This document shows positions 27,700-48,794 of a DNA stretch of 64,000 nucleotides, one piece after another (the stretch's first letter is position 1; each line of letters opens with the position of its first letter). The translations under genes were made by a program, and so were the position numbers. Origin of the DNA: Isurus oxyrinchus (lineage: Eukaryota); NCBI GenBank assembly GCA_026770705.1, contig JANJGN010000009.1, positions 163,494,001-163,558,000 on the forward strand, given 5' to 3'. The notes under the pieces are model-generated. The model saw nothing but the letters and a program-made list of their open reading frames with translations, was not told where the DNA came from and did not search any database.

Positions 27700-27900
27700 T
27701 TAAATATAACTGACAGAAGTTCACGTTCTTAGGGCCAGATTTCATCAGATGCCTTAATATGGCTTCATGACCTGGCTTCCTGCTATCTTCTTCCTCATTT
27801 AAATTCCTTGCATCATTTATATTAGACACTTATTTCAATGTGAGAAACAAGAGCTGAGTGTCTGGAAACAAGTTCTGTCCTGATCTTTGTGAACAAAACG
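27700..27900 (+). promoter_or_regulatory. Putative proximal promoter of paralog B with PU.1/ETS-like and GATA motifs
   Basis: Directly upstream of the ATG. CTTCCTCATTT at 27790..27800 (minus strand AAATGAGGAAG), CTATCT at 27783..27788, further TTCC cores nearby. Motif matches only; no TSS evidence. Confidence 0.35.
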
Positions 27901-27937
27901 ATGTGGATTTTGATTCTCCTCATTAGTTCTCTGCCCG
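27901..27937 (+). CDS. Paralog B exon 1: signal peptide
   Basis: aaacgATG (A at -3) MWILILLISSLP G|gtgagt; phase 1, in frame with the V exon. Confidence 0.85.
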
Positions 27938-30900
27938 GTGAGTGACAGCCAGACCTGGATATTCCAATAATCTGAGTTGGTTTAACTCTCGTGCGCTGGT
28001 TATACAGCAGATGTTTAAATATTTGGAGACATGCAAAGGCACAAAAGAGGTCTTGGGCACAGTGGGTTGTGTCTCTGTATCTGAGCCAGAAGCTCTGTGT
28101 TTGAGTCCCACTTCAGTTCTTGTTGAGAATGGAAGGCGCGTTCTAACCAGGCCCAACAGGTTGATTATCAACCTGAAAATCTTCCAACAGACCGAAGGCT
28201 GGTGGGAAGAGGGTTTGAGATCCCAGTGCAACATGTTTGTTGTGGAGTGGTGCCGCTCATTCTGTTGCCTCCGGAGGTTGTGACCTGTTTCAGGGAAAAC
28301 AAGCTTTGGAAAGCAAAAGTAAACATGTGCTTTGTCTGCCGCATCCGTCTCTAGATGTGGGAAGTCTCCTAAGTCTAAAGGCACAAATTAGTCAGCAAAA
28401 CCAAATGAATAATAATTGTGAAATATATTATTACCCTGTGAATTTACTATCACACCATGGGAATAGTTAACAAATAAACTGAACTGCATTATTAATTATG
28501 AATGATAAGTAAAGGAGAATTCAATTTTCAGAAATCTATGCAAGCAACATTTTGAAAATGAAAACCTGTTTTAATTGGTAATTTTCAATATAATCTGATG
28601 TCCAGTATACACTGAAAACTGCAGCGGTAATAATCCCACAAATAAAACATGTCCCAAGTTGGCGAATATTTCTGTTTTTTAAAGTACAGTTGATGAAATA
28701 TTGTGTTATGAGGCTCTCTCAGTGACACTGTTCCTCACTGGTAGATGGTTGGTCTACATCACTCTTCTCATAAGTAGCCTTTTCTTGTTCATTCTTTAAC
28801 TTTAAGAAACTAGATTTTGCTCATCACTCAGTATTGCCACCTCTCCATCATTTTCAATGAATGTATTTTATAACACACAATGTTAAACTCCCAGCCCCAT
28901 CTGCTCTAAGCCACTACTTTAACTTCCGCAAAATATTTTGTGCCTCTAGCTTATCAATTTTATGCAGAATACTTGATGTACTTATGGACAGGAAACTGAA
29001 TCATGTTTCTGTCGGTTTGGCAATCTTCTTCTTTTCAATCCTTCCTCTTTCTGATCTGATCTCTTTCCCATTTGCTTTTCAACTGTAACTTTTCCTGTAT
29101 CTTTTTCCTTTTCTTCACTTCTCTCTAGCCATTTAATTATTTTCAATCTCTCTTTTGTTATTTTAGTGCAAACTCTTTCTCCACAGCATGAGTTTCTCTC
29201 CCAGCAAGGCCATTGGTCTCATGAACGTTCAAGTCAAGGCATCCAAATCCCTACCTCAGGAATCCATCCATCCTTCAAGGCCACCTATCACACAACCTCT
29301 CAAACCTTCAAGGCCTTCAAATCCTACCTATGGACATCCCTAACTCATTCAAGATCTGAACACCCCCTCCTGCAAGGACCCAAGCATCCCCCGCACCCCA
29401 CCCACCTCAGATCAGAGCAGGGAACTGTCGGCTCCTGTGACCCCCTCCACACTGCTCCCCAACCAACTGCAAATCAGGCCTGTCAATCAGACTGGTTTCT
29501 GGAACCTCTTGATGATGTCATACGCAGTCTGGGGTTAAACCCTACAGTATGGGGCAGAACCTCAATTTCCAGGTTCCCCACACTCTACCAACCCCTGCCA
29601 ATAAGTCAAGAAAATGCCCCAAATATCTCCCAAATAAATCATTGTCTGAGACGCGCTTTGGAACACAGTGAGGCTCTGATAAGTGTCTATATGAATGATT
29701 ACTCTCATCACAAACTTGATGGAATTTAACTCATTAAAATGCATCTGTTTGAATTAAGCAGTTATTTCCAGTTCAGTTTCTCAAATGTTGTCTCCTCAGT
29801 TTCAGGTGCATTGTGGGCAAAAAAAGAAGTAACAGGAGTTGTGGGAAGAGCGATCACAATAGAATGTCACTATGATGCACGTTACAAGTCACATATAAAA
29901 TATTGGTGTTGCGGCTGGAGTCGCCAGTGTAATATTTTAGTATTGAAAAATCAGCAAAATGGAAGAATATCGATCACAGATAACAAGGCAACAGGAATAT
30001 TTATTGTTACTATGGTGGATCTTCACTCAAGAGATACAGGATGGTACAGCTGTGGTATTGACAAACCTGGCCTCCTCGATTCAATGTTTGCTGTGTGGCT
30101 ACAAATATCTTACGGTACATTTCTTACTGATTTTCTTTATTATTCTCAACTGAAATGTCTGCTCAATGTTTTATCTGAGAGGAAACATGACAGCTCCGAT
30201 ATCCCGAGGCTCCACAGCAATGCAGAGACTTAAAGGTAAAGGGCAGAGGTCGGGAAATCCAACTCATGTTACCCAAACCCAATTCATGGCCTGTCAAACA
30301 TGTCAGAGTTGAACTTTACAAGTGAACTAAACGGAAATTGAGAAGTTGTTTTGATGGTAAAAGAAGCCTCTTTATTAATTGTTGAGACATTGGGCTGGAT
30401 ATTCAGCCTCAAAGCGGGTAGGGGCAATTCGGAAAATTCCCCGCTCGGCCTTGGAAGAAAGTGCCCACAAAGGTGGGATTTCCATTGCTGGGAGCTGTGC
30501 CCAGGCTGCAGTCTGGCCAGCCACACCAGGAAGAAATGCAGAGGCAGCCACAGGGACTGCCGGCTGCGGAGACGGGCTGTTTCAAAGGCCCCTCCTTAAT
30601 GCCCTTGGACTTTGTAACAGCTAAACTCAAAACACAAAGGCCCTTCACCCCTCACCCCCCACAGCCCACAAAGAGGGTGGGTATAAGGGGAAAATTTGTC
30701 ATGAGAGTTCTTGGAGGTGGGTGGAAGTGTACAGCTTGAAGTCAGGAGCATGATGGATTATAAGGCGTGGGTAAAGGGACATAGGGGGCATTAACGGCCA
30801 AACGTGATGGATGAGGATGTGACTTGACATAGGGGGCATGAGATGGACCTTTTGAACTTAGCTCTTAAAAGGTCCCCTCATGCAAACCAGTGTTTACAGC

Positions 30901-33900
30901 TCCTCTGAGGGGCTTTGGACTACGACTCATTCAAAACCTGGCCCGAGTCCATGAAAATTGCAGAGGAGTAGGACGTGTCTGTCTCCACAATGGAGGCAGC
31001 CAGGTTGGAGTGTAAAAAACAAAAATACAAACAAAAAACTGAGGATGCTGGAAATCCAAAACAAAAAGTAAGAAATACCTGGAAAATCTCAGCAGGTCTG
31101 GCAGCATCGGCGGAGAAGAGCACAGTTGATGTTTCGAGTCCTGATGACCCTTCAACAGAACTAAGTGAAAAGAAGAGAGGGGTGAAATATAAGCTTGTCT
31201 AAGGGGTGGGGGTGGGGGTGCGGGTGGATAGAGAAGTGGGGAGGTGGTTGTTGGGACAAGCAAGCAGTGATAGGAGGAGATAACCAAAAGATGTCACAGA
31301 CAAAAGAACAAAGAGGTGTTGAAGGTGGTGATATTATCTAAAAGAATGTGCTAATTAAGAACGTATAGCAAGACAAGCAAGGTACAGATAGGTCATGTGG
31401 GGGTGGGGTGAAATAAGACTAAAAGGGCATAAAATGTATAGATAAATGATCAGTGGAATACATTAAAAATATTGCAAATAGGTGGGAAAAGAAAAATCTA
31501 TATAAATTATTGGAAAAAAGAAAAAGGATGGGGAAGAAATGGAAAGGGGGTGGGAATGGAGGAGGGAGTTCAAGATCTAAAATTGTTGATCTCAATATTC
31601 AGTCCAGAAGGCTGTAAAGTGCCTAGTCGGAAGATGAGGTGTTGTTCCTCCAGTTTGCGTTGAGCTTCACTGGAACATTGCAGCAGGCCAAGGAACAGAC
31701 ATGTGGGCAAGAGAGCAGGGTGGAGTGTTGAAATGGCAAGCGACAGGGAGGTTTGGGTCATTCTTGCGGACAGACCGCAGGTGTTCTGCAAAACAATCAC
31801 CCAGTCTGCGTTTGGTCTTTCCAATGTAGAGGAAACTGCATTGGGAGCAACGAATGCAGTAGACTAAGTTGGGGGAAATGCAAGCGAAATGCTGCTTCAC
31901 TTGAAAGGAATGTTTGGGCCCTTGGACGGTGAGGAGAGAGGAATTGAAGGGGCAGGTGTTGCATCTTTTGCGTGGGCATGGGGAGTTGCCATAGGTGGGG
32001 GTTGAGGAGTAGAGGGTGATGGAGGAGTGGACCAGAGTGTCCCAGAGGGAACGATCCCTATGGAATGCCACCGGGGTGGTGAAGGGAAGATGTGTTTGGT
32101 GGTGGCTTCATGCTGGAGTTGGCGGAAATGGTGGAGGATGATCCTTTGAATGCGGAGGCTGGTGGGGTGATAAGTGAGGACAAGGGGGACCTTATCATGT
32201 TTCTGGGAGGGAGGAGAAGGCGTGAGGGTGGATGCGCGGTAGATGGGCCGGACACGGTTGAGAGCCCTGTCAACGACCGTGGGTGGAAAACCTCAGTTAA
32301 GGAAGAAGGAGGACATGTCAGAGGAACCGTTTTTGAAGGTAGCATCATTGGAACAGATGCGACGAAGGCGAAGGAACTGAGAGAATGGGATGGAGTCCTT
32401 ACAGGAAGCGGGGTGTGAGGAGCTGTAGTCGAGGTAGCTGTGGGAGTCGGTGGGTTTGTAATGGATATTGGTGGACAGTCTATCACCAGAGATTGAGACA
32501 CAGAGGTCAAGGAAGGGAAGGGAAGTGTCAGAGATGGACCATTTGAAAATGATGGAGGGGTGGAGATTGGAAGCAAAATTAATAAATTTTTCCAGGTCCA
32601 AACGAGAGCATGAAGCAGCACCGAAGTAATCATCAATGTACCAGAGAAAGAGTTGTGGGAGTGGGCCGGAATAGGACTGGAACAAGGAATGTTCCACATA
32701 CCCCATAAAGGGACAGGGGCTCATGTGGGTACCCTTAGTCACACCTTTTATTTGGAGGAAGTGAGAGGAGTTAAAGGAGAAATTGTTCAGTGTGAGAACA
32801 AGTTCAGCCAGACGGAGGAGAGTAGTGGTGGATGGGGATTGTTCGGGCCTCTGTTCGAGGAAAAAGCTAAGGGCCCTCAGACCATCCTGGTGGGGGATGG
32901 AGGTGTAGAGGGATTGGATGTCCATGGTGAAGAGGAAACAGTTGGGGGCAGGGAACTGGAAATTGTTGATGTGACGTAAGGTGTCAGAGGAATCACGGAT
33001 GTAGGTGGGAAGGGACTGGACAAGGGCAGAGAAAAAGGATTCAAGATAACGAGAAATGAGTTCCGTGGGGCAGGAACAGGCTGACACGATCAGTCTGCCG
33101 GGACAGTTCTGTTTGTGGATTTTGGGTAGGAGGTAGAAGCGGGCCGTCCGAGGTTGGGCGACTATCAGGTTGGAAGCTGTGGGAGGAAGATCCCCAGAGG
33201 GGATGAGGTCAGTGACAGTCCTGGAAACAATGGCTTGATGTTCAGTGATGGGGTCATGGTCCATGGAGAGGTCGGAGGAAGTGTCTGCGAATTGACGCTC
33301 AGCCTCTGTGAGGTAGAGGCCAGTGCGCCAGACAACAACAGCACCACCCTTGACAGCGGGTTTGATGACAATGTTGGGGTTGGATCTGAGGGAACGGAGT
33401 GCAGTAAGTCACAAAACAACTGTTTGCTGAAATGCTAAACAAAGATAAATATTGAGATAAAAGCAAAGAACTGCGGATGCTGGAAATGCAAACCAAAGAC
33501 AGAAATAGAAATATCTGGAAAAACTCAGCAGGTCTGGCAGCATCGGTGGAGAAGAGCACAGTTGATGTTTCGAGTCCTCATGACCCTTCAACAGAACTAA
33601 GTAACAATAGGAAAGGGGTGAAATATAAGCTGGTTTAAGAGGAAGGTGGGTGCGTTGTTGGGACAAGAAGCCAGTAATAGGTGGAGATAACCAAAAGATG
33701 TCACAGACAAAAGAACAAAGAGGTGTTGAAGGTGGTGATATTTTCTAAAGGAATGTGCTAATTAAGGGTAGAAAGCAGGACAAACAAGGTACAGATAGAC
33801 CTAGTGGGGGTGGGGTGGGGTGAAGGAATACTAAAAATTCTAAAAATTAGAGATTAACAGTGGATGGAAATACATTTAAAAATAATGGAAATAGGCGGGA

Positions 33901-36900
33901 AAAGAAAACTCTATATAAACTATTGGAAAAAAACAAAAAGTGGAGGAAGAAACGGAAAGGGGATGGAGATGGCGGTTGGGGCCAGGGAACTGGAAATTGT
34001 TGATGTGACGTAAGGTGTCAGAGGAATCACGGATGTAGGTGGGAAGGGACTGGACAAGGGGAGAGCGAAGGGAGTCAAGATAATGAGAATTGAGTTCCGT
34101 GGGGCAGGAAGAGGCTGACACGATCAGTCTGCCGGGACAGTCCTGTTTGTGGATTTTGGGTAGGAGGTAGAAGCGGGCCGTCCGAGGTTGGGAGACTATC
34201 AGGTTGGAAGCTGTGGGAGGAAGATCTCCAGAGGAGATGAGGTCAGTGACAGATCTGGAAGCAATGGCTTGATGTTCAGTGGTGGGGTCATGGTCCAGGG
34301 AGAGGTAGGAGGAAGTGTCTGCGAGTTGACGCTCAGCCTCCACAAGGTAGAGGTCAGTGCGCCAGACAACAACTGCACCACCCTTGTCAGCGGGTTTGAT
34401 GGCAATGTTGGGGTTAGGCCTGAGAGAATGGAGTGCAGTATGTTCAGAGAGAGACAGGTTAGAATGGGTGAGAGGAGCAGAGAAATTGAGACGACTAATG
34501 TCACGCCGACAGTTCTCAATGAAAAGATCAAGAGAAGGTAAGAATCCAGAGGGAGGGGTCCAGGTGGAGGGAGAATATTGGAGGTGGGTAAAAGGATCCG
34601 TTGAATGGGGAGAGGACTCCTGCCCAAAGAAGTGAGCCCGGAGACGAAGACGGTGGAAGAAGAGTTCAGCATCATGCCGAGCCCGAAATTCATTGAGGTG
34701 AGGACGTAAGGGTATGAAACTAAGTCCTTTGCTGAGCACTGAACGTTCAGCATCAGAGAGGGGAAGGTCAGGGTGTATAGTGAATACCCGACCGGGGCTG
34801 GGATTGGAAGATGGGGTGGGGACAGAGGGACAGGCAGGGTTGGAGGGTCCTGGATGTGTGTTGGTATCACTGAGTTGTTGCAGCTTGCGTTCCTTAGCAC
34901 TTGAGAGAAAGAGAAAAGGTTTCTTGTTGAGGCGACGGATGAGACGAAGAATAGAATGAAACTGGGGGCACGGGCAGCTTTGGAAAGGGGTACGGCGATG
35001 CTGCTGGAGGGAGAGGTCGAATGTGTTCATATGGCAGCGCATGGCACTGAGTGTGGATCTCAGAATGCAACGGGAACAGTATTCCGAGGAATGTTGTATG
35101 TCCCAGAGATACCTGTAATCCTGGGTTGGTTCGAATCCGATGGAATTTCAGTTGAGATCCACATGGGGTAAGTCGGAGACGGAGACAGTCACTGAGAAAG
35201 GAAATATGGCTGTGAAAGCGGGTTTTAGTAAACACCTTGTCAAACACCAGGAGAGAAATGGAAAGCAATGAAGGTAAATAAGGCAAAAGAGAGATATGAA
35301 AATCCTGACGGAGAGTAGTACAAAACTTCTTTAAGGTAGGGATGTCTTGAAGAGAAGTGGCAGTCAATTAAACACGGATAAAAGCAAAAAACTGCGGATG
35401 CTGGAAATTCAAAACAAAAACAGAAACATAAATAGCTGGAAAAACTCAGCAGGTCTGGCAGCATCAGCGGAAAGAGCACAGTTGATGTTTCGAGTCCTCA
35501 TGACCCATCAACAGAACTAAGTAAAAATAGGAGAGGGGTGAAATATAAGCTGGTCTAAGGGGTGGGGGTGGGTGGTGGTGGAGGGAGAAGTTGTTGGGAC
35601 AAGCAAGCAGTGATAGGAGGAGATAACCAAAAGATGTCACAGACAAATGAACAAAGAGGTGTTGAAGGTGGTGATATTATCCAAAAGATTGTGCTAATTA
35701 AGGATGGGTAGCAGGACAAGCAAGGTATATGGTGGCATCATGCTGCAGTTGGAGGCGGAAATGGCGGAGAATGATCCTTTAGTGCGGAGGCTGGTGGAGT
35801 GATAAGTGAGGACAAGGGAGACCTCTTCATGTTTCTGGGAGACTTGCTGCCTTCTTCCAGTGAAGCTCAATGCAAACCGGAGGAACAGCACGTCATCTTC
35901 CGACTAGGCACTTTAGAGCCATTGGGACTGAATATTAAGTTCAACAATTTTAGATCATAAACTCCCTCCTCCATCCCCACCCCCTTTCTGTTTCTTCTCC
36001 CTCCTTTTTCCTTTTTCCAATACTTTATATAGATTTTTCTTTTCCCACCTATTTCCATTATTTTTAATGTATTGCACCGATCATTTATCTATACCTTTTA
36101 AGCCCTTTAAGTCTTATTTCACCCCACCCCCACTAGAGCTATCTGTACCTTGATTGTCCTGCTATCCATTCTTAATTAGCACATTCTTTTAGATGATGTC
36201 ACCACATTCAACACCTCTTTGTTCTTTTGTCTGTGACATCTTTGGGTTATCGCCTCCTATCACTGCTTGCTTGTCCCAACAACTACCGCCGACTTCTCTC
36301 TCCACCGCCCCCCCGCCCCCCGACCCATTAGACCAGCTTATATTTCACCCCTTTCCTATTTTTACTTCGTTCTGTTGAAGGGTCATAAGGACTCTAAATG
36401 TCAACTGTGCTCTTCTCTGCCGATGCTGCCAGACCTGCTGAGTTTTTCCAGGTTGGGGAGTTCTGGGTGTGGCTTTTGAATGATCCAGCCTGTATCCTTT
36501 AAAGCTGCTCCCAAAATCACACAACCCAGGAACGCAGTTGGGAATCCCAGAATTAGGACACACCCGCCATTTTTAAAGGGCTCCTGAATCAACCCAAGTT
36601 GGTGAAATCCAGGCCGTCACTTTGGTCTGAAGGCTGCACAAAGCACAGGGTAGAGGTCCTGGACTGAGACACCTGCCTTTATCTTGTACAGAAAGTGTTC
36701 ACATGTGAGTGACATGAACATTGCTCATCAAAACAAGGAGCGATAGGCAGGGAGACATTCTTTGGAGTTTATTGACAATAATGAACAGTATGTACAAGTG
36801 ATTAACACCCGTGCCCAGGACGTGCAACTGGCCTAAATAGCCAAGTGGTTATGGTACTGGGTTTGTAACCCCAAGATCAGGAATTCAAATCTCACAATGG

Positions 36901-39900
36901 CAAAATATGAAACAATGTAACTTGATCTGAATAGGAACAGATGGAAATGTGTTTGTACTCAAAAGAGTTACATTTCCTCAACTCTCGAGGCCTTCCGTGC
37001 TCAGTGGGGACTGGGGTGCTTTATTGACCCCTTTTAGCACTTTTTGGTTTAAAGTTGTAAGTTTCCTTTAAACTTCGTTCTTGGTTTTACAGCTGACCTA
37101 AATTAGGGGCTGTCCCTTATTTATCCTAATTTTGTAAATTTAGTTTAATTGTTTTGACTCTATAAGAGTTACATCTCCTCAACCCCCGTAATATGAGCCG
37201 CCTCGGGGACATGTTCTCTGTGCCATTTGGCACAGCAAAGAGGAGCTTTTTGTACGGACTGCTGCTGCACATCTTCCATTTTCTCGCCCTTCTCCGCCGC
37301 CTGGATATGCCCTGGCATGCCTTGTTGCCTTCCGGCAGCGGAGGCCCCCGATGGGAGGCCCTCTGAGGAGGTGTCCTCCCCCTTTCTATCGGGGACCTGG
37401 GTTCGAGGGTGTTGCATGCAGCAGTCCCCTATAATAGGAGAATTCATAGGTTCACGGACTCCCAAGACACATGCCCTTTTCGTGGTCTTGTGGAGTCCGT
37501 GGACCATGCATACATAGGGTGTGGTAGGTTGCACTCCCTTTTCAGTTACTTGATGAACCTTTTGTTAATGTTTTGTTTGCACTTCAGCCCCACGCTCCTG
37601 ATCTATGGACACCCGGTGCGGAAGGGGGTCGGAAAGGAGGAGGACCTCCTCGTGAACCTGCTCCTGGGCCTGGCCAAGTTGGCCATTAACAGGTCCAGGC
37701 AGCAGGCGATCGAAGGGGGAGTCCCGCCCAATTATTTATCCCTCTTCCGCGGCTACGGTCGCAGCCGGATGTCCCTGGAAAGGGAGCATGCGGTGTCTGC
37801 CGGCACTCTCGAACCCTTCCGTGCTCGGTGGGCACCGCGGGGACTGGGGTGTTTTGTTGACCTCTTTTATCACATTTTGGTTTAAAGTTGTAAGTTTCCT
37901 TCAAACTTTGTTCTTGGTTTTACAGCTGACCTGAATTAGGGGCTGTGCCTGATTTATCCCAATTTTGTTAATTTAGTTTAATTGCTTTGACTCTATAAGA
38001 GTTACATCTCCTCAACTCTCGAGACCTTCTGTGCTCGATGGGTGACCACGGGGGTTGGGGTGCTTTATCCAGCCTCTTAATCACATTTTGGTTTGATGTT
38101 GTAAGTTTCCTTTAAATCCTGTCTTTGGTTTTGCAGTGACCCTAACTTAGGGGCTGCGTTTTATTTTGTTCCTCATTTTGTTAATTTAGTTTATTTGTTT
38201 GGCTTTAAAAGAGCTACATCTTCTCAACTTTCCTAATCCTCCCGTTACATCTTGGTGCTCCGCAGACATCCAGAGTGGAAGTAAAGACAGTCTGCTGACT
38301 GCTATGCTCTGTCTGTGATAACTTTGGCGGGCGTCCTCTGGAGGCCTGAGGCCTGGAGGGCCCCGGCTTCCTTTCGAGGTCCTGCTGTGTGGCATTACCA
38401 CCCTCCTTGGCCTGTGGACCTGGAGCTGTCAAGGTCACAGTAAGAGGGGAGTTACCAGGATGAATGGCCCCGGAGGGTACACATGTTGATCCTTCTCGCT
38501 ATTGGCTGAATTAGCGAGCAGCAGGGGTAGCTGGAGTGAGATTGAGCTGCCCGCACCCCTCTCTCATACACACTGTCAGGGGCCAACTATACATCAGCAA
38601 TGGAGTTCAGCCCCACAGCAGTGTAGGAACGGTGCCCTGGACCAACATCTCCAAGGCACCTACGATCCTACCAGTGTTGACCTTGGTGCATTGACATGCC
38701 AGCGCTATCACCTCAGAGTGCAGGTGGATGGATTCCTCCATATTAACTGAAAATTTTATTTAAAAAGAGAGAAGGTCACCATCTAATCCTTTATTAACTG
38801 TGTTTAATTGTATGCAGTGGTAGCATTAAACAGATGTCTTCAGGTCTGGGCCTTGTACACACTGTCTCCTGGGAGTTCTGACCAGCTACCCTGCTGTCTT
38901 CAGGGAGATCTGGCCAACCATCCTGCTGTGTTCTGGGAGATCTAAGCAGCTACCCCCTCACATAGGCTTCAGTATTCCCTTAAATGTGTTTCTTCTCTTT
39001 CATCTCTCTTTGTTGCAACCAGTCTGAAAAGAAATGCTTTTCTTCAAAGGATTGATTAAATCAATCTTTACCTCTTAGACTTGTAAAAACAAACTTACTC
39101 TATGTTTATGTCACGTCCTTACACCTTTTTACAACCTGCATATATCTCCCTTTGAACTAAAACAACACAATTCAAACTATTTCTGTTATTGCTTCATGTA
39201 CAAGTCTGTTGTAGTTCTTTTTTGTTTATTAACATATCAAAACCACTTCAAATTGTTGACTTTTGACCCTATCCACTGATGAGGCAGTCCATGTCATGGA
39301 ACCATAACCTTAAATCTGGAGATAGGCTCGTCAGGGATGTCAGGAATCACTTCTTCACGCAAAGTATAGCGGAAATCAGGAACACTCTCCTCAAAAAAGC
39401 TCTTGAACTTAAATGAAAATTTCAAAACTGATTGACAGATTTTATCTGGTAGCAATATTCGGGTTATGGGACCCCGGTAGGTAAATGGACAGAAGATACT
39501 GGTCAGTTGGGATTTAATTGAATTGTGGAACAGGCTGAAGGGGCTGCATGTCCGAATCCCTTTTCCATGTTCTGGAGCCCCAGTTAATTTTTCAGTGGTC
39601 TGGGCCTTGTGAGTAACAATGTGCTGTGAAACAAGCTCACAAACAGTTAGCATTTCAAAGAGACACTTTCCAATCACCAGGCAAACTGTGACCTGTGTTG
39701 TTTCAGAGTACAGTTTGTGACAGTGAAAGCAGTGAAGGCCTGCCAAACCTCATTAAAATCAAGTTCTGTCGAAGGGTCATGAGGACTCGAAACGTCAACT
39801 CTTTTCTTCTCCATCGATGCTGCCAGACCTGCTGAGTTTTTCCAGGTAATTCTGTTTTTGTTTTGGATTTCCAGCATCCGCAGTTTTCTTTGTTTTTATC

Positions 39901-42900
39901 TCATTAAAATGTTGGTGAAATTGTCACTTTTCTCTGGCTAATCCCTTGACCAAAGAGGGAATTTTAATTCCCCTCCCCCATCCTGCATCGTGTTGAGGCA
40001 TGATGGGATTTGCTGGATCCAGAACCTTCTCCAGCACGGCTTGTGATCCAGGAGACACACGAAAGCTTCACCCCCACCCCCAGGCAAATGTTTTATACAA
40101 TTTCTCCCTCCCCATGATTGGCCAATCCTGCCCCAAGCAGCAAAGTCACCCTGACTCCCTCCTCGCTGTTGTGCTCCGAGGCAACATTCCCACCAATTTC
40201 CAAACTTTTACCATAACGTTCCTACTTGGAAACCAGCCAAACATTCAATCAGTGTGCAAGAATTCTGGTGAGATTTTGCTGTTAAATTCGGCACAAACTC
40301 AACATTCCTGGTATTTCCAGCTTTCTCACCACCCCACGCACAGTCCCCCCTCTCGTCTCCACGTACCAGGGTTGAAGTGTTCTATCGCAGCATGCAGAGA
40401 ACCAGAGCCAATCACATTTACATTCTTATCCAAAGCTACAAAACATGTAACCGATATCTGACAACATTTTGCCCTCATTTTACCCTTTGCTTTTCTAAGA
40501 TTCTCTCCAACCAATTCACATTCAACTCACAAACAATGAAACAGCATTGGAGGCTCACTACCAGCTACGAAGAGATATTGTTCACCATGATATTCATGTT
40601 AACATACTCTCAGTATCATAGCTGCTGTTCTGATCTGGAGACCTGATATGTTCTGATATAATGGCTGAAAGGGTAACTCAGGCCTCTAAGAGGATGGAGA
40701 GATATGGGGATGGATTTTTAAAAAGTATGGTGTCAGGATTAGAGATGGGTGGGTGTGAAATTTGACACCGCTGGTCTCCATGCCAATTTACTGTTACAAT
40801 CCCAAGCCCGAAACATTTAGAAAGCAGGCGGCTTGCAGTCAAGTGGTGGGCAGCTAACTTAGGAAATAACATTTACCAAAGGGGCCAATTAAAGACCCAT
40901 TCCTGCGCCCACTGGGATTTCATTCAGCAATGCAAGCAGACCACATTACCCCTTCAGGATCATGGCCCGGCAGCTGCCGGGTTTTGAAACATAAAATAAA
41001 CTTACCTGGACTTTCCCCTTGCTGTCTCCATGCTCAGGTCAGCAACTCCCACCTCACCTGGTGAGGCCCTCTAGCATCAGGAGCCCGCCCACTGTCCCTG
41101 ATTGGATGGTGAGCCAGTTCCAGTCTTTTGATTGGCAAGAACATTGAAAATTGCAGTGGGCATGCCTAAAGAATGGTGAATGGTGTCAGGACCTGAAACT
41201 ATCTCCCATGTCCAGTTCCCAAACCCAAATTTAACATCCACCCCATAGAGTGGTAGATGTGTTGGTGAGATTCCAACATGGCAGAGCCTGGCTGAGATGA
41301 AGTGCAAAGTTTGAAGAGTATTTGATTATTAAATGTTCAGTATCTGAATGTTTCTTTCTTTCCAACAGAACCCGTGTCTGTTCCTGTGCTTAGATTTTCA
41401 TCACCAGCAAATGTCTCATGTTCTGGGGGTTCAGTGTCCGTCTCCTGTGAGTCTGTCCAGGGATCCCTTCCCATTCAGTACACATGGTATGAAAAGAACC
41501 TGTCTGAAGATTCAAAGATCTCTGACACCAATAAACTGGATCTACATTGTCAATCCTTCAAACAGCAACATCATCAATATTACTGCACAGCCTCAAATAA
41601 TCAGGGAGTAAAATCCAGTGACACTGTCACTGTTAACTCAACACTCATGAATGTAACAACGAAAAGCTACAGTTATGTGATACAAATTGGAAACATTGGT
41701 AAGTGTTACTTTCTACAAACAACGTGGCGAATGAATGTTTAAAATTCATGTCTATCCAAACTGGTCACTGTTTCAGTTCCTTCAGTTTATCTGAGAAATT
41801 GCAGCTGGCCAAATTCACTCTCTCTGGTTCCTCAAACATTCTGAACAAGGTCACTAAGTTGCATTTTTCATGAAAAATGGACAGGATCAGAAAATATCCC
41901 CAAAACATGCAAAAATATTGCAGAATCTCCAATAAACCCATCGAATCAAAATAGCATTTGATTGACAGAGCTTTCATAAAGCAATTTGTCTATTTCCAGC
42001 AGATGGAATTGTGAAATGCAACCTCCAACTGTTGTGTCCTAGTTTGGGAAGGATATCACTGATAGAATAGAGAAGAATTGAATTAAAATGAACCCTTGGA
42101 CGAGAGGTTTTAGTCATGAGGAAAGTATCATCACAACTGAGGTGAATGACCAGCTGGAGGACGTGGAAATTGTTAGAAATTTGGATAAGATAACTCTAAC
42201 TATTTCCACTAGTCAGTGAGTCAGCAACAAGAGAGCATTAACTTTAAAATTATCACTAAAAGGACAAAGGGAGAAATTTGGAGAATTTTATTGATGCAAA
42301 CTGTTTTTAGGACATGGAATGCCCAACTGAAAGAAGTTTACAAACAAATTTAATAATAGATTTTAAAAGGGAAACAAATGTATGAGGGTGTGGGAAAAGG
42401 ACAATGAAATGGAATTAAATGAGGAGATCATTCAGAGAACCAGCATTGGAGCGATGGGCTGAATTCCCTCCCCTGTGTTGTAAAAATTCCATCATTCCAG
42501 ACAAAATCTCAACTTATCCTGTCTAAAAAATTAACTATTCCCTCCCCATAAAACAATGACCCTGGTTCTGACATAAGGAGGACTTTAGCCTATTTGAATG
42601 TAGCGGTTCAATTTTCTGCAGAGTGGGTGCAGCATGTTCACCGAGAAACACCAACATGGGCACAAAACAAAGAGAATCACATTTTCACCTGAGCAGCAGG
42701 AGACAGGAATTTACATATGCAAATATATTGACTCTGGTCATGTGGTCTCTTGCCTCAGTTGTCAGGGAAGAAGGGTGGAATTTTACACCCCCATTGCGCC
42801 AGGGACTGGGCTGTAAAATGCAGCCAGCCATTCTAAACTCCATGCACTCCAGCAGGACCATAAAATCCCACTGTCACAAGGCTCTGAGCAAAGGCTGTCA

Positions 42901-45900
42901 GCAGCAGGTAGAAATTACACCTGTAAACTGTGTTTGTACTGGAGTTGTCAGCAGGGACTCAGTTGCACTCTGACCTTTGATGCCAGTCTTTTGTAGTTAC
43001 AAGTTCCCCTTAAGAGTTAAAATTCGGGCTGATACCATGATCCAGCACTGAGGTAGTGCTATACTGGTGGTGGTGCTGCTGTGTAGATGAGGTGTTAAAC
43101 TGAGGATCCACATCCCCGTTAGGTAGATGTAAACATTTCCAGGGTATTATTCACAGAATAGGGAAGTTCTCCTGGTGTCCTTGAAGCCTTTATTCCTCAA
43201 CCAATACACACAAATAGGGAGCAGGAGCAGGGTATTTGGTCTTTTGAGCCTGTTAATGTCACTACAAAACAGATCATCTAGTGAATGTTTTACTGATGTT
43301 TGTGGGGCTTTGCTGTGTACGAATTAACTTTCACGTTTCTTGATATTAAAACTGTGGCTTTACTTCAAAAAAGTACTTCATAGGCTCTGAAGCACTTTGG
43401 GATATCCCAAGGTTGTGAAAGGTGATGAATCAACACACATTGTTTCTTACTTTTTGAAACAAATGATTTATTAAAATACATCTGAACCAATTATCTGAGT
43501 GCAAACGGCAGGGGGGAGGGGGAGGGAGGAGCCAGTCCCAGCAGCAAGGTGGGTCATTATAATTAAATGGACAGAAAATCACTGGCAGGTTTGAGACATT
43601 CATGGTCTGTTGGTGAAGATTCTCATCTTTACTGCAAGCTCAGAAAACTGCCCCCAAAGGGCAGAAAGTGACCATTGCCAGTATTAGGATGTGACTGTTT
43701 AATGTGTTCACATGAAATTCATGTAATGAAAGTGTATCTCTGGATTGTAGTCCACCAACCTGAGCCCTTAAATGGCCCACCAACTCTCAGATATAGTAAA
43801 GAAAGTGGAATTACCAGTAAAGATAGATCACCACCAAGTATCTGCGACCTCTCCACTTGTGACCAGAGAGGGGTAAATTACACAGAAATCAATTCTACCA
43901 GCCAGGCTTTTCCTCAATTAATGAGGTTCCATTTGACAATGATGCTCTCTCAGTTGACTACAAGTGAAAATGAGCTGAATCTGAATGTTATTCTTTTGCT
44001 TCAACAGGACCTGAGTATTTTTGTGATGTTTCTACAACAGTATCACCAACTACACATTTGACAAGTACAGATATAATTTCCACTACCATTCGAACCACAC
44101 CTTCAGATCCCGAAAATGCTGAAAGGTACAATGTTCTCATGGATTGGCATTGCTTCCATATGTGAGAGATACGATTGGCCAAAGGAGTGAAAGTTGTTCA
44201 TTAATTTGGAAAGTAGCTCATCAGAATGGAAATGGTGGCTGGGTTTATATCATGCTGTTGTGTTAGCTTCTTAATGAGGGTGCATTTTTCTGTTGGAAAA
44301 TACAAGCAAGGAGTGAGCTTTTCCATTGTGTTGCTGCTCAGATGGTGTTTTATGCCTTATTCACCTTGATTACTTCACCGCTAAGGTAATCTCACAGTGT
44401 GTGAGGAGTTGTACTTGTCAAACTTACCTTGCTGCTGCCTACACTGACAGAGTAGCTGTATTTGGGCTGATGAAAAGGAAGAATTAGCGTGATATATCTG
44501 CACATCCTTTGGTTTCACTAATGAGAGACATCTTGCAGCTCTCGGCCCGTTTCCATATTATAAACCTAAGCTGTTGACAATAAGTAGCAGAAATTGTAGT
44601 CCGATGTAAACACTCAGGAATCGGGTCTTTGAAGTTACAATGGTGATAAAGAGAAAACGCCAACTAAATGTCAAACAGAAAGAGGGACAGTTGGAAATGG
44701 ACAGCAGGTATGTCCGCAGCTGTGGAGAAAATAAACACGTTCATGGTTTGGGTGTAGACACTTCTTCAGAATTCTAGTCCACACACGAAGTGAAACAGGT
44801 CCACTCACCCCACAGATCCCAACTGAGCTGCTGAATGTTTCCAGAATATTCTGTTTTCCATTCATATTTCTAGCACATGCAGTGCACTTACTTTTATCCA
44901 GATTATTGTCAATGATTTAAGAAGTATAGAAAGTATCTGATTTTTATTTTAAGACAAATCTCTATGTCTGCTCTGTTGTATAAAGTTGACAACAAAGATC
45001 ATCTGAATATGAAATCCATATATGTATGAAACAGTTATTACTTCCACTTTTTTCAGGGAACATCAGGTATTCTTGCATTTGGATTTTAATAATTAAAACT
45101 GACTCAGTATTAAACAAGGCTCAGTGGTAACACACTCACCTTACATGTCAAAGGCTGTGGGTTCACTTCCACTCCAGAGACCTCAGCACATTATCTTGGC
45201 TGACACTCCAGTGCACTACTGAGGGAGTGCTGTGCTGTTGGAGGTGCCACCTCTCAGATGTGATACACCCAAGGCCCATCTGCTCTCTCAGGTGGGTGTA
45301 ACAGATCCCATAGTGACATTCATAGAAGAGCAGGGCAGTTCTCCCTCGAGACCTGGGCAACATCACTAAAAAAAACAAATTATTTGTTCATCCAACTAAT
45401 TGCTATTTGTGGGAGCATGCTGTGTGCAAATTGAGTGCCACATTTGCCAAATTACCACAGTTACACTGCATTAAAAATATTCATTGCTTGTAAAGTGCTT
45501 TGGGATGTCCTGAGGTCATGAAAGCCACTTTATAAATATCTACCTTTAAATATTTCTTTAAACAAATGGCCAATAATCAATTGTGAACCAACACTGTCCC
45601 TTGTCTATTCTCTGTTTCACAGTCTGATTTACATTGTGCTCGGAGTGCTGGGGGGCATTCTTGTGGTGTTTGCTGTTTCTCTACTTCTGTACCTGAGGCA
45701 AATCAACAAGGGTGAGTTTTTATTTCTCTTTAATCATTTTATTATATGGCAATAATTTGCTGCAGAAGGAAAGAATATACAGTTTGTTGGATCAATCAAC
45801 AATCACCCATGACCCTAGTATTCTCATTCTGGTCTACACATATTGAACATGGGGCTGAATTTTTCTCTATTCGAGCGGGCGCACACCAGATCCAAACGAG

Positions 45901-48794
45901 AGTAAAATAGTGCGCGATGAGGTCAGACGAGCTTCTGGACATTATCGTACACTCTGGCGATATTTCTCTCTGCAGGCACGTGCGAGAGGCGGCAGCACGC
46001 CCGCTGACAATGAAGCAACATATTAAGGCCCTTAATCAATTAATAGAATTGAATTTTTTGCTGCCGGTCCAACTGTTCAGTTGGTTTGTGGTCAAATCGG
46101 CCAATCAGCCTTTGCACTTTTGGCGAAACCTCATCAATGGGCGGGATGGGGTTTTGACCAGTGATTAAAGCAAAAACTTTGAGAACTCGTATTTAAATGG
46201 CCATGGTCATTTGCAAAGTCACATGAGGGGACATGTTTTCATTAGTTTTCAATTCTTTATTTCAATTGTTCAAAATCTTCAGCTCCCTGAGGCAGCTCTG
46301 AGACTCAGGGAGCTTTCACTGTCAGCACGCGCACACATGCACAAACTTGCACGCTTGCCCTCCTCCCACCCTCACGCCAGCAGTGCTGAGCGTTGCAGCG
46401 CGTATTATGCACTGACTGTCCATTAATCTTCCAGCCCGTATGAAATCGATGTTGGGGCCTGATTCGGGGCAGTGGTCGGCTTCACAACCACTCCTGAGCC
46501 CACCTGCCATGCCCATCCGACAAGGGCAAAATTCTGCCCATGGAATAATTAAGTTGAGTATTGCTGATAAAAAATACATTTGAACAGATGAACAAGGAGC
46601 AGGAGTAGGCCATTCAGCCCCTCGAGCCTGCGCCGTTATTCAATAAGGTCATGACTGATCTGATGGTAACCTGAAATCTGCATCCCAGCTACCCCCCACA
46701 TAACCTATCACCCCCTTGTTTACCAAGAATCTATTCACCTTCCCCTTAAAAATATTCAAAGACTCTGCTTCCCCCACCTTTTCAGGAAGAGACTTCCAAA
46801 GACTCATGACCCTTGGCGTGAAAAAATTTTGCCTCATCTCCATTTTAAATGAGGGCGACCCCTTATTTTTAAATAATGACCCCTAGCTCTAGATTCTTCC
46901 ACAAGAGGAAACATTCTCTCCACATCCAGCCCATCAAGACCCCTCAGGATTTTATTCTGTTGAAGCAATCAGCACTCTCTTCTCATGCAGTATAAATTGT
47001 TGCTCCCTTTATTGTTGGTATTGTTGCAAACTGTCCTGATGAGAACAAGGCAAAAAGCTTTGACAGTGCGTCTCTTTGAATGAGAAAAATTGGGCCTCTG
47101 ATTTCTCCCTGTGATGAATTGCTTGACCTTACATCAATGACACAACATAACAGGTACTTGTATTCAGGATAGAATTGATCAGTTTTTGAAATGCTCAATC
47201 CTAAACACACGGGAGTTAATTTTCTCTTTCACATCACGGGTGTTAATCTGTCAGAGTGCTAAATAGAAATTAATGGAATGAAATTTGGGTGCGTTCTCTA
47301 ATAGACAATCTGTTCTGTCAGACAGAAAACGTCATATGCTGGTAGTGTAGTTGCTGGTTTCTGGTGTGTGTGGCCTATCTTAACGAGAGAAACTAGTGTT
47401 ACTCTGTGACTTGCTTTAAACTGCTTTATTAACACTGTATTTAAGAGAGGTTACAGAGTAGGTATGCCTCCCCTGAGTAGAGTGTTCCATCCTCTCTCCC
47501 AGGTAAATAGCACATGACTGCCAATTTCATTGATACATCATGGTGTACATCACTCATCAGCATAGCTATTCTATTAACCCATTACACTACAAACCCTTTT
47601 GTCATGCTATGTATAATAACCAGGCTGATTGTTCAATCCATGTTGGAAATCATTGGTGCAATGCAGATGAACACATTTCCATGAATGTGGATCAATGTCA
47701 GGTTTAGCACACTTGCAACTCATGTTTAGTTTAGAGATTTTAAACATATTAACCATTCCTTGTTACAGTTCTTTCAACAGTTACATTGTAATTTTTCAGG
47801 TACAAACTGCATTCCAAGTCAGCGGAGAGACAAGACTCTCCATTATAATCAGGTAAGGATATAAACATTACTTCTCTGAATACTGTTTGGAAATTTGCAA
47901 GCTGGTGGATATAGAATTTACTAAGAACTTACAGCCATTCGGCCCATCTGCACGAGGCTGGTTTTTATGCTCCACATGAACCTCCTCTCACCCCTCTTCA
48001 TCCCACCCTATCAGCATATCCTTCTGTCCTTTACTCTCTCATGTGCTTATCTAGCTTTCCTTTAAATGCAGCAATCCTATTGGACTCAACTCCTCCCCAG
48101 GGAAGGAATAAGGAATTCAGAAGAAACTTCTTTACCCAGAGAGTGTCAGAATCTGAAATTCGTTACTTTAAGTCAAAGTTCAGGCAAAAACCATAAATAA
48201 AGCTGGATAAAGCTGGATAAGCAGTTGAGGGAGAAGGTAATAGAAAGATATTTTGAAGAGGTTGGATGAAGAGGGGTGGGAGGAGGCTTGTGAGGAGAAT
48301 GATACTGGTATAGACCCATTGGGCTGAATTGTTTGTTCCTGTGCTGTAAATAATTTTTAATATCTTGTAATCCTTTATAAACTGATTTATAATAATGGAT
48401 ATATAGCTTTCTCCTCATAACAGCACAAGTCACCATTCAGGCTAATCAAAAATAAATGCAATCATTTTTTTAATATATTTAGGAATTGGCAGCAGAGGAA
48501 GAGGGCACTGTGTATGCAAATGTAAACCACACTCAAAGGAGCTCGGCAGGAACACACAGAGAGGGAACTGCCGAGTTGAATAATGAGGAAATCACATATG
48601 CAGCAGTGCAATTACAAAAGAAATCGTCTACACAGAGAGGTGAAGGGACAAGTCACTCAGTTAACAACCCGGACAGTGTCATCTACAGTGGAGTCATGAT
48701 TCACAACCAGCCCACAAAGAAAAACCCTAAAACTCCATTACATGATACTCCCCAGGAATCTGAAATGGCAATTTATGCTACCGTTACTCATTAG
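27901..48794 (+). CDS. CD300/pIgR-like (MDIR-like) V-C2 inhibitory Ig receptor, paralog B, complete, 417 aa
   Basis: Exons 27901..27937, 29800..30114, 41369..41698, 44008..44125, 45623..45711, 47800..47852, 48483..48794 total 1254 nt in one open frame with canonical splice sites. The protein starts MWILILLISSLPVSGALWAKKEVTGVVG and ends AIYATVTH*. Confidence 0.88.
29800..30114 (+). CDS. Paralog B exon 2: CD300/pIgR-type V Ig domain
   Basis: tcctcag|TT TCA GGT...TAC G|gtacat; ITIECHY, KYWC...C, GRISITD, F-x-V-T-M-x-x-L...DTGWYSCGI signatures. An in-frame alternative acceptor lies 6 nt downstream. Confidence 0.92.
31009..36452 (-). mobile_element. Composite Penelope-like element (RT + GIY-YIG) with tandem and inverted pLTRs
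   Basis: ORFs 33876..35042 (LSKGLSF, KPADKGG), 32293..33264 (FYLLPKIHK, MDIQSLYTSIP, YIDD), 31667..32071 (NLVYCIRC..C...YIGKTKRRL). pLTRs at ~31015-31560, 33455-33960, 35380-35730 (minus) and 35845-36452 (plus). Frameshifted. Confidence 0.93.
36831..36902 (+). pseudogene. tRNA-like sequence (tRNA pseudogene or SINE head)
   Basis: A-box TAGCCAAGTGG, B-box-like GAATTCAAATC, anticodon-like arm TGGG-TTTGTAA-CCC; poor acceptor stem. Confidence 0.45.
36983..38228 (+). mobile_element. Three tandem 5'-truncated L1/Tx1-clade 3' ends
   Basis: ORF 37409..37885 CPFRGLVESVDHAYIGC...LLLGLAKLAINRSR...TLEPFRARW is the Tx1 ORF2 C-terminus. Units are separated by AAGAGTTACATCTCCTCAAC-like repeats. Confidence 0.85.
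39300..39570 (+). mobile_element. Degraded CR1 3' end
   Basis: ggaccataaccttaaa...gtcaggaatcacttcttcacgcaaag...tggaacaggctgaagggg. Confidence 0.6.
39755..39900 (+). mobile_element. Young Penelope pLTR end (its paralog ends at window positions 1..40)
   Basis: Near-identical to 10200..10310. Confidence 0.8.
39761..39800 (+). ncRNA. Minimal type I hammerhead-ribozyme-like motif in a Penelope pLTR (A6U core variant); identical copy at 10204..10243
   Basis: AGTT-CTGTCGA-A-GGGTC-ATGAG-GACTC-GAA-ACGT-C-AACT: stem I, core, stem II, palindromic helix III and GUC cleavage site. Confidence 0.55.
41369..41698 (+). CDS. Paralog B exon 3: C2-type Ig domain
   Basis: Same boundaries as 1508..1837; 3 nt differences. 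Confidence 0.92.
44008..44125 (+). CDS. Paralog B exon 4: stalk
   Basis: cag|GA CCT...GAA AG|gtacaa; ...ISTTIRTTPSDPENAE. Confidence 0.85.
45623..45711 (+). CDS. Paralog B exon 5: transmembrane
   Basis: Identical to 5778..5866. Confidence 0.9.
47800..47852 (+). CDS. Paralog B exon 6: cytoplasmic exon 1
   Basis: cag|GT ACA...AAT CAG|gtaagg; GTNCIPSQRRDKTLHYNQ. Confidence 0.82.
48483..48794 (+). CDS. Paralog B exon 7: ITSM/ITIM tail
   Basis: tttag|GAA TTG GCA...CAT TAG; same four Tyr motifs as paralog A. Confidence 0.92.
   Translation, partial: ELAAEEEGTVYANVNHTQRSSAGTHREGTAELNNEEITYAAVQLQKKSSTQRGEGTSHSVNNPDSVIYSGVMIHNQPTKKNPKTPLHDTPQESEMAIYATVTH

What the first reader, a model, noticed from the sequence alone, without database searches (positions are those of the whole stretch)
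27901..48794. Shark inhibitory immune receptor joining a CD300/pIgR-type V domain to an FCRL-type C2 domain
Seen: seven phase-compatible exons give an intact 417-aa type I membrane protein that the ORF track shows only in pieces. Established: KYWC plus a second C-C' cysteine marks the CD300/pIgR/FcmuR/TREM V family. PVSxPVL...CExxxGSxPIxYxW...CxAxN is the FCRL/PECAM-type C2 pattern. Mammalian CD300s have a single V and pIgR has only V domains; the closest described group is the skate modular domain immune-type receptors (MDIRs). Inference: this is a member of an expanding, functionally uncharacterised elasmobranch receptor family. It may be the inhibitory arm of a paired-receptor system sensing phospholipids or immunoglobulin.
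Basis: partly seen in the sequence, partly recalled or inferred. Interest (0 to 1): 0.8.

Follow-up and report, generated by a model that had tools for sequence, protein, structure and literature searches.

The report
Shark MDIR2-type inhibitory immune receptor gene
This is a real, spliced and transcribed shark gene for a two-domain cell-surface receptor with an inhibitory tail, but it belongs to the MDIR receptor family described in skate in 2006, so it is a new member of a known family, not a new design.

Summary
Seven GT-AG, phase-compatible exons (27901-48794, + strand) add up to 1251 coding bases, or 417 codons. The layout is leader, CD300/pIgR-type V domain, FCRL-type C2 domain, Ser/Thr-rich stalk, uncharged membrane span and a four-tyrosine ITIM/ITSM tail.

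Transcript contigs from one public sample cover only exons 1 and 2. They show the leader-to-V joint. Junctions 3 to 7 rest on splice signals, phase and homology only.

The headline novelty does not hold. Skate MDIR2 (416 aa) has the same layout; its V is 61% and its C2 55% identical to these exons. RefSeq models with this layout exist in sharks, rays, skates and a chimaera. V-C2 is the repeating unit of the family, and some relatives have an arginine in the membrane span and a short tail.

The window also holds the intact exons 3-7 of a second copy, inside a 39.9-kb tandem repeat about 98% identical. Ligand and inhibitory signalling remain untested. The scan had already noted neighbouring copies of this gene on adjacent DNA. 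Verdict: new member of a known kind, modest interest.

The parts
27848..27937 (+). Exon 1. The 5'UTR starts at or before 27848. The ATG is at 27901 and the leader reads MWILILLISSLP plus 1 nt (phase 1). The donor is GTGAGT.
   Evidence: Sequence read. The X1 contig starts at 27848, and the joint 27937->29800 is seen in X1, X2 and X5.
29800..30114 (+). Exon 2 (315 nt, phase 1-1): the end of the leader (VSG) plus a CD300/pIgR-type V-set domain with five cysteines (ITIEC, WCC, RQC, YSC).
   Evidence: Pfam V-set E 1e-8. PDB search: CD300f E 1.4e-16, pIgR. The acceptor at 29800 and the donor at 30114 are used in RNA contigs.
41369..41698 (+). Exon 3 (330 nt, phase 1-1): an FCRL-type C2 Ig domain with four N-glycosylation sequons, plus the membrane-proximal segment ...SYVIQIGNIG.
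   Evidence: Pfam Ig_3 E 2e-7 and Ig_2 E 4e-7. FCRL5 domains E 3e-8. The X1 loose end at 30114 equals 41369-41398 exactly.
44008..44125 (+). Exon 4 (118 nt, phase 1-2): a Ser/Thr/Pro-rich stalk with one cysteine (PEYFCDVSTTVSPTT...).
   Evidence: Splice and phase scan and sequence. It is 71-73% identical to the stalks of P0216 and P0244.
45623..45711 (+). Exon 5 (89 nt, phase 2-1): the membrane span LIYIVLGVLGGILVVFAVSLLLYL, with no charged residue, followed by RQINK.
   Evidence: Hydropathy scan and sequence. It is 90-93% identical to the TM of P0155, P0244 and P0191.
47800..47852 (+). Exon 6 (53 nt, phase 1-0): a juxtamembrane cytoplasmic segment, (G)TNCIPSQRRDKTLHYNQ.
   Evidence: It is the only candidate with the right phases and strong sites. 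Sequence. It parallels GTNSILSYRRDKTLHDNQ in P0244.
48483..48794 (+). Exon 7 (phase 0): a 103-aa tail with TVYANV (ITSM-like, also YxN), ITYAAV and VIYSGV (ITIMs) and AIYATV, then stop TAG.
   Evidence: Sequence. It is 91% identical to the basking-shark model P0244, and the motifs are conserved in P0071, P0177, P0191 and MDIR2/3.
1508..8954 (+). Exons 3-7 of the upstream paralog (copy A): 1508-1837, 4163-4280, 5778-5866, 7956-8008 and 8643-8954. All are open and have the same splice sites as copy B.
   Evidence: Exon-by-exon comparison: 9 differences in 899 coding nt, of which 7 change an amino acid.
39862..64000 (.). The second unit of a ~39.9-kb tandem repeat. It matches window 1-22231 at about 97-98% identity. 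Both ends of the match are window edges, so the array probably continues.
   Evidence: Self-BLAST of the window.

Best explanation
The locus is an intact, transcribed member of the cartilaginous-fish modular domain immune-type receptor (MDIR) family, of the MDIR2 type.

It is a type I membrane glycoprotein. A membrane-distal CD300/pIgR-like V domain presumably binds the ligand. An FCRL-like C2 domain and an O-glycosylated stalk act as spacer. The membrane span is uncharged. The cytoplasmic tail has four conserved tyrosine motifs: two canonical ITIMs, one ITSM/YxN and one ITIM-like.

The likely mechanism, which is inferred and not shown, runs as follows. Ligand engagement near an activating receptor leads to tyrosine phosphorylation of the tail by Src-family kinases. 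SHP-1, SHP-2 or SHIP is then recruited and leukocyte activation is dampened.

The gene is one unit of a recent tandem array with a period of about 39.9 kb.
For: **Shown**
- Seven open, phase-compatible GT-AG exons.
- Spliced RNA contigs join exon 1 to exon 2, and exon 2 to the exact start of the C2 exon at 41369. Introns have zero depth.
- Domain types come from Pfam and PDB sequence searches.
- Skate MDIR2 (P0215, named as such in UniRef) aligns V to V at 61% (E 3e-36) and C2 to C2 at 55% (E 4e-25). It has the same order, size, uncharged TM and an ITIM.
- Full-length RefSeq models with the same layout align exon by exon. They come from Heptranchias (P0071, 418 aa), Heterodontus (P0177, 417 aa), Scyliorhinus (P0191), Chiloscyllium (P0202), Pristis (P0203), Leucoraja (P0209) and Callorhinchus (P0229).
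- A second intact copy of exons 3-7 lies in the window.

**Inferred**
- Inhibitory signalling is inferred from motif conservation (ITYAAV-type ITIM in all full-length relatives) and from the uncharged TM.
Against: - There is no functional data for any MDIR, and the ligand is unknown.
- RNA evidence is contigs from one sample of one study. Only 30 of the 226 letters beyond 30114 were shown.
- Junctions 3-4 to 6-7 were not tested with reads.
- The contigs differ from the window at 29822-29827 (AKKEV versus AKERV) and at a few other bases. They therefore come from another allele or individual, or from a near-identical copy.
- The first tyrosine motif has T at -2, not I/V/L, and the last has A at -2.
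- The V domain has an odd fifth cysteine. A stalk-proximal cysteine conserved in relatives (CSYV) is Y here, which could affect folding or pairing.
Confidence: 0.82

Rival explanations
1. It is an immunoglobulin (Fc) receptor. The pIgR/FCMR/FCAMR-like V domain would bind polymeric IgM, or IgW/IgNAR, and the ITIM tail would make it an inhibitory Fc receptor of sharks. This concerns the ligand and is compatible with MDIR membership.
For: The V exon matches all five pIgR domains (summed E 1e-39; D5 E 3e-11; D1 E 3e-6) and weakly matches FCMR. The C2 matches FCRL5 and FCRL4, which bind Ig in mammals (the binding is from my own knowledge). One relative is auto-named 'high affinity immunoglobulin alpha and immunoglobulin mu Fc receptor-like' (P0221).
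Against: The best single-domain match is CD300f (64 bits), not pIgR D1 (36 bits) or FCMR (22 bits). RefSeq names are automatic. No binding data exist, and no Ig-binding residues were tested.
Confidence: 0.15
2. It is a lipid sensor like mammalian CD300a and CD300f. The V domain would bind phosphatidylserine, phosphatidylethanolamine or ceramide on dead or activated cells and deliver an inhibitory signal. This also concerns the ligand only.
For: The closest solved single domains are CD300f/CLM-1 (E 1.4e-16), CMRF35-H (E 7.5e-13) and CLM-6 (E 1e-12). The tail has ITIMs plus a YxN motif, which resembles CD300f. That resemblance is from my own knowledge and was not tested here.
Against: No lipid-binding residues were examined. 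Identity to CD300 domains is modest. According to earlier scan notes, which I did not verify, the V exon is the most variable part of the array. That fits a variable protein or pathogen ligand better than an invariant lipid.
Confidence: 0.2
3. The copy is a decaying or non-functional recent duplicate, or the 98%-identical repeat is an assembly artefact (haplotypes laid in tandem), so there would be only one real gene.
For: The two units are 97-98% identical over 22 kb. Seven of nine exon differences change the protein, as expected under relaxed constraint. The V domain has an unpaired fifth cysteine and lacks a conserved stalk cysteine.
Against: All seven exons are open with intact splice sites, and the gene is transcribed and correctly spliced. 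The RNA overhang carries the copy-B base at the one diagnostic site in its first 30 letters. The units differ by indels and by about 2%, more than expected of haplotypes. Earlier scan notes report different V exons in the neighbouring units, which I did not verify.
Confidence: 0.06

Closest known systems
MDIR2, modular domain immune-type receptor 2 of the clearnose skate (P0215, UniRef A0S0E..., 416 aa; Cannon et al. 2006, Immunogenetics 58:362, cited in PMC3031540)
   Same: It has the same order and size: leader, CD300/pIgR-like V, FcR-homolog-like C2, stalk with the ...CSxV...YxC... segment, uncharged TM, and a tail with an I-x-Y-A-A-V ITIM. The V is 61% identical (E 3e-36) and the C2 55% (E 4e-25). 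The leader is nearly the same (MWIPILVVCSLPVSGA versus MWILILLISSLPVSGA).
   Different: The tail is only about 25% identical (E 0.005). MDIR2 has one canonical ITIM against two plus an ITSM-like motif here. The species is a different order (skate versus shark). The shark V carries an extra cysteine and lacks one stalk cysteine.
RefSeq models in other cartilaginous fish with the same layout, named 'uncharacterized protein', 'pIgR-like', 'FCRL5/6' or 'CMRF35-like molecule'. Examples: P0071 Heptranchias, P0177 Heterodontus, P0191 Scyliorhinus, P0216 Carcharodon, P0244 Cetorhinus.
   Same: They align exon by exon. P0216 gives V 74%, C2 78% and stalk 71%. P0244 gives stalk 73%, TM 91% and tail 91%. 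The four tyrosine motifs are conserved.
   Different: None retrieved is this gene; the best V identity is 74%. Several are partial or chimeric automatic models. None has been studied.
Mammalian CD300 family (CD300a, CD300f/CLM-1)
   Same: The V domain is the best solved-structure match (E 1.4e-16) and has the extra C-C' disulfide. It shares a stalk, a single TM and an ITIM-bearing tail.
   Different: CD300 ectodomains have one Ig domain only. This protein has a second domain of C2 type, so it fails that defining feature.
Polymeric Ig receptor (pIgR)
   Same: The V exon matches each of the five pIgR V domains.
   Different: The pIgR ectodomain is made of V domains only, and its tail carries transcytosis signals, not ITIMs (own knowledge). 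Here there is one V plus one C2.
FCRL family (FCRL5, FCRL4)
   Same: The C2 exon shares the PVSxPVL...CE..GS.PI.Y.W...YYC.A.N pattern. It matches six FCRL5 domains at E 3e-8 to 2e-3. The tail is ITIM-type.
   Different: FCRL ectodomains are strings of C2-type domains without a CD300-type V domain at the tip (own knowledge).

Membership tests
MDIR (modular domain immune-type receptors of cartilaginous fish) | Significant domain-by-domain sequence similarity to proteins named MDIR | tested here: met
   tblastn of P0215 (MDIR2), P0168 (MDIR3) and P0185 (MDIR5) against the window gives V at 55-61% (E 1e-29 to 3e-36) and C2 at 55-76% (E 1e-21 to 1e-28).
MDIR (modular domain immune-type receptors of cartilaginous fish) | Ectodomain built from CD300/pIgR/TREM-like and FcR-homolog-like Ig modules in variable number | tested here: met
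   There is one V-set module followed by one FCRL-like C2 module. Among 251 retrieved relatives, V-C2 (50), V-C2-V-C2 (29) and longer strings are common.
MDIR (modular domain immune-type receptors of cartilaginous fish) | MDIR2/3 subtype: uncharged TM and at least one cytoplasmic ITIM | tested here: met
   The TM LIYIVLGVLGGILVVFAVSLLLYL has no charge. ITYAAV and VIYSGV fit (S/I/V/L)xYxx(I/V/L). MDIR2 has IMYAAV and MDIR3 has ITYAVV, VVYADV and SIYASV.
MDIR (modular domain immune-type receptors of cartilaginous fish) | Large multigene family, clustered | tested here: met
   A second copy of exons 3-7 lies 39.9 kb upstream in the window. Many paralogs per species appear. The full array lies outside the window and was not examined.
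CD300 (CMRF35-like) family | V-type Ig domain with canonical and extra C-C' disulfide | tested here: met
   CD300f/CLM-1 at E 1.4e-16 over residues 6-100. The KYWC and RQC cysteines align to the pIgR D1 KYWC...MC pair.
CD300 (CMRF35-like) family | Ectodomain consists of a single Ig domain | tested here: not met
   A C2 exon (41369-41698) is spliced directly after the V exon in RNA.
pIgR | Ectodomain of two to five pIgR-type V domains and no C2 domain | tested here: not met
   There is only one V exon in the gene and in the whole window. The second domain is Ig_2/Ig_3, FCRL-like.
FCRL | Ectodomain made only of FCRL-type C2 domains | tested here: not met
   The N-terminal domain is V-set, CD300/pIgR-like. 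Only the second domain is FCRL-like.
ITIM-bearing inhibitory receptors (functional class) | Phosphorylated ITIM recruits SHP-1, SHP-2 or SHIP and inhibits activation | not testable with these tools
   Only the motifs and their conservation were seen.

The most novel reading that the evidence does not exclude
The ~40-kb units of this array are kept almost identical (leader, introns, C2, TM, tail) while the single V exon of each unit is strongly diverged. On this reading the locus is a cassette system: concerted evolution fixes an inhibitory signalling chassis, and diversifying selection or exon exchange generates a germline panel of different V tips. Activating partners with an arginine in the TM lie elsewhere. 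This would be a shark counterpart of KIR, LILR or NITR-type pathogen-driven paired receptors.

It rests on earlier first-stage notes about the neighbouring units, which I could not check from this window. Here I only see that the 3' halves of two units are about 99% identical in exons, and that most exon differences are non-synonymous.
Probability: 0.35. Interest if true: 0.5.

Novelty: new member of a known kind. Interest (0 to 1): 0.3.

Why it matters
The report gives a transcript-supported gene model, with exact exon coordinates, for a shark MDIR2-type receptor. It shows that current automatic names for this family ('pIgR-like', 'FCRL5', 'CMRF35-like', 'uncharacterized') hide one coherent family whose repeating unit is a CD300/pIgR-like V plus an FCRL-like C2.

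That is useful for annotation, and for anyone asking how the CD300/pIgR and FCRL lineages relate in early jawed vertebrates. It does not overturn anything. The architecture was published for skate in 2006, and no MDIR has a known ligand or a tested signal. The open biological questions, ligand and paired activating partner, remain open.

Tried and rejected
- **Exon 2 acceptor.** I first placed it at 29806 (TTTCAG|G), which gave 415 aa.
- **P0177.** I suspected that P0177 (Heterodontus, also 417 aa) was this very gene. It is only 57-81% identical exon by exon, so it is a relative.
- **Same-species protein.** I looked for an annotated protein of the window's own species with three word searches and the representative search. 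The best V identity is 74% and the best tail identity 91%, so no exact match was retrieved. This is no proof of absence, because the length limits of the word search exclude single-exon queries from finding full-length kin.
- **Other exons in the window.** tblastn of 262 family proteins found no further V, C2 or charged-TM exon in the window beyond gene B and the 3' half of copy A.
- **MDIR paper.** The MDIR paper (PMC3701310) and a related review (PMC2823954) are not held. What I say of its content beyond PMC3031540 and the UniRef names is from memory.
- **Paper searches.** One paper search was wasted on the word 'skate'.
- **Steps not taken.** I did not fold the domains, because sequence matches to solved structures were already decisive.
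Full report
**1. What is in the sequence**

On the + strand between 27901 and 48794 there are seven exons with GT..AG introns and matching phases.
- Exon 1 (CDS 27901-27937) encodes MWILILLISSLP plus one base and ends at GTGAGT.
- Exon 2 is the V exon. I first placed its acceptor at 29806, but transcript contigs use the AG six bases upstream, so it is 29800-30114, 315 nt.
- Exon 3 (41369-41698) is the C2 exon, with acceptor ...ccaacag and donor ATTG|GTAAGT.
- Exon 4 (44008-44125) is a Ser/Thr/Pro-rich stalk.
- Exon 5 (45623-45711) is the membrane span LIYIVLGVLGGILVVFAVSLLLYL, with no charged residue.
- Exon 6 (47800-47852) was the only candidate with the right phases and strong sites.
- Exon 7 (48483-48794) is the 103-residue tail ending in TAG.

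Every test below is exon by exon.

**2. Is it more than chance, and is it expressed?**

Pfam gives V-set (E 1e-8) for exon 2 and Ig_3/Ig_2 (E 2e-7 and 4e-7) for exon 3.

A search of public runs with the V exon found one sample (runs X1, X2, X5 and X6 of one study, organism coded) that holds it. I laid those runs on 27500-30800.
- Contigs lie only on 27848-27937 and 29800-30114, with zero depth over both introns. Given the small size of the runs (58-98 million letters), this makes them RNA.
- Three runs show the joint 27937->29800 (GT..AG).
- One 631-nt contig of X1 runs through exon 1 and exon 2 and continues for 226 letters beyond 30114.
- The 30 letters shown, AACCCGTGTCTGTTCCTGTGCTTAGATTTT, match 41369-41398 exactly. 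They match the upstream copy at 1508 with one mismatch, and nothing else in the window.

Caveats:
- The evidence is contigs from one sample of one study.
- The remaining four junctions were not tested with reads, because only one read-laying run was available.
- The contigs differ from the window at 29822-29827 (AKKEV versus AKERV) and at three single bases, so they come from another allele or individual, or from a near-identical copy.

**3. What the domains are**

Against solved structures, the V exon is closest to CD300f/CLM-1 (E 1.4e-16). Next come CMRF35-H and CLM-6, each domain of pIgR (D5 E 3e-11), NKp44, TLT-1, TREM2 and FCMR. Its KYWC...RQC cysteines align with the second disulfide of pIgR D1.

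The C2 exon matches six of the FCRL5 domains (best E 3e-8), then FCRL4 and CD22 d6-d7. PECAM did not appear.

The tail has TVYANV (ITSM-like, and YxN), ITYAAV and VIYSGV (canonical ITIMs) and AIYATV.

**4. What it is**

The representative search with the V exon found 2178 relatives, but none above 66% identity. Several of about 410-420 aa align to the V, C2, TM and tail exons in that order. They are RefSeq models from sharks, rays and skates with automatic names such as 'uncharacterized', 'pIgR-like', 'FCRL5' and 'CMRF35-like'.

A word search with one of them, the natural protein P0071 from Heptranchias, brought in three proteins that UniRef names modular domain immune-type receptors 2, 3 and 5 of the clearnose skate.

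MDIR2 (P0215, 416 aa) has the same layout as this gene:
- Its leader is almost the same.
- Its V is 61% identical (E 3e-36) and its C2 is 55% identical (E 4e-25).
- It shares the stalk segment, has an uncharged TM, and has an IMYAAV ITIM at the position of ITYAAV.

MDIR3 and MDIR5 are strings of the same two modules.

A census of the 251 proteins in hand is a biased sample, but it shows V-C2 in 50, V-C2-V-C2 in 29 and longer strings in others. V-C2 is therefore the family's building block, not an unusual fusion.

Some V-C2 relatives, and MDIR5, end in ...VIRWVLFTLLVICSVSVTMFTRKH: an arginine in the membrane span and a tail of a few residues, the usual mark of activating partners.

[quoted passage not shown] The original paper (Cannon et al. 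2006) is not held. From memory, it also lists FcR homologs among the similarities.

The nearest relatives of this gene are a great-white model (P0216: V 74%, C2 78%, stalk 71%) and a basking-shark model (P0244: stalk 73%, TM 91%, tail 91%). They are continuous across exons 1-4 and 4-7 respectively, which supports the untested junctions. No retrieved protein is this gene itself.

**5. Surroundings**

The window matches itself: 1-22231 equals 39862-64000 at 97-98% identity. This is a tandem repeat with a period of about 39.9 kb whose ends are the window's edges.

The upstream unit contributes intact exons 3-7 of a second gene at 1508-8954, with the same splice sites. It differs at 9 of 899 coding bases, and 7 of those change the protein. 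Overall divergence of the repeat is 1.6-2.0%.

There is only one V exon in the window, and no exon for a charged membrane span.

Earlier first-stage notes place 315-letter V exons about 9.7 kb before and 7.5 kb beyond the window and call them hyperdiverged against near-identical flanks. I could not check this from here and use it only for the 'novel case'.

Intron 2 (11.2 kb) holds antisense retroelement fragments.

**6. How it most likely works**

Shown: it is an expressed, correctly spliced type I membrane protein of the MDIR2 type.

Inferred from motifs and their conservation: the V tip binds a ligand, the tail is phosphorylated on its ITIM/ITSM tyrosines, and it recruits SHP-1, SHP-2 or SHIP to dampen activation.

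The ligand is unknown. A CD300-like lipid ligand and a pIgR/FCMR-like immunoglobulin ligand are both open guesses.

**7. Verdict**

The gene is a new member of a family known since 2006. Its V-plus-C2 design is that family's standard unit, and its function is untested. Interest is modest (0.3). The array's possible V-exon-focused diversification is the part worth a follow-up.

Noticed in passing
window 29800-30114 and 41640-41698 / 44008-44030: The V domain has a fifth cysteine (KYWCCGW, where relatives have KYWCHGW). The cysteine conserved in relatives before SYVIQ (KNCSYVIQ) is tyrosine here (KSYSYVIQ), in both copies A and B. The extracellular cysteine count stays even at 10, but the pairing may differ. 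One possibility is that the free stalk cysteine in EYFC forms a dimer.
   Followed up: partly
window 29822-29827: All three RNA contigs read AAAAGAAAGAG where the window has AAAAAAAGAAG (AKERV instead of AKKEV). X1 and X2 also differ from each other at 29882 and 30000. This points to alleles or near-identical copies being expressed.
   Followed up: no
window 42088-42219 (copy at 2227-2349): An ORF in intron 3 (MNPWTRGFSHEESIITTEVNDQLEDVEIVRNLDKITLTISTSQ) is 78-80% identical to the first 41 residues of the basking-shark model P0244, which splices it to the stalk exon. It may be an alternative first exon giving an isoform without an ectodomain, or an annotation artefact with neutral conservation.
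   Followed up: no
window 44125-44165: The great-white model P0216 ends by reading through the exon-4 donor (…PENPERHSRNQILRA*). Here read-through would add RYNVLMDWHCFHM and a stop. This hints at a possible secreted V-C2 isoform.
   Followed up: no
window 31667-35042, - strand: Intron 2 holds antisense retroelement fragments. One ORF has YIDD and a weak RVT_1 match (32293-33264, E 2e-5, below the Pfam cut-off). There is a partly duplicated second copy (33876-35042; 32941-33406 matches 33975-34440 at 93%). An upstream ORF (31667-32071) looks to me, by eye, like a GIY-YIG nuclease as in Penelope-like elements; it had no Pfam hit.
   Followed up: partly
window 21174-21412, 61730-62205, 62835-63177: A 27-nt G-rich minisatellite (GAGGAGGCTGAGGTGGAGGCAGTGACT) lies in the intergenic part of the repeat unit. 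It has 9 copies in unit A. In unit B it forms two arrays of 18 and 13 copies, so array length differs between the two units.
   Followed up: no
window 1508-8954 versus 41369-48794: Seven of the nine coding differences between copies A and B change an amino acid (N/T in C2, I/N and T/S in the stalk, Q/H in exon 6, and E/V, E/D and P/L in the tail). None touches a tyrosine motif or the TM.
   Followed up: yes
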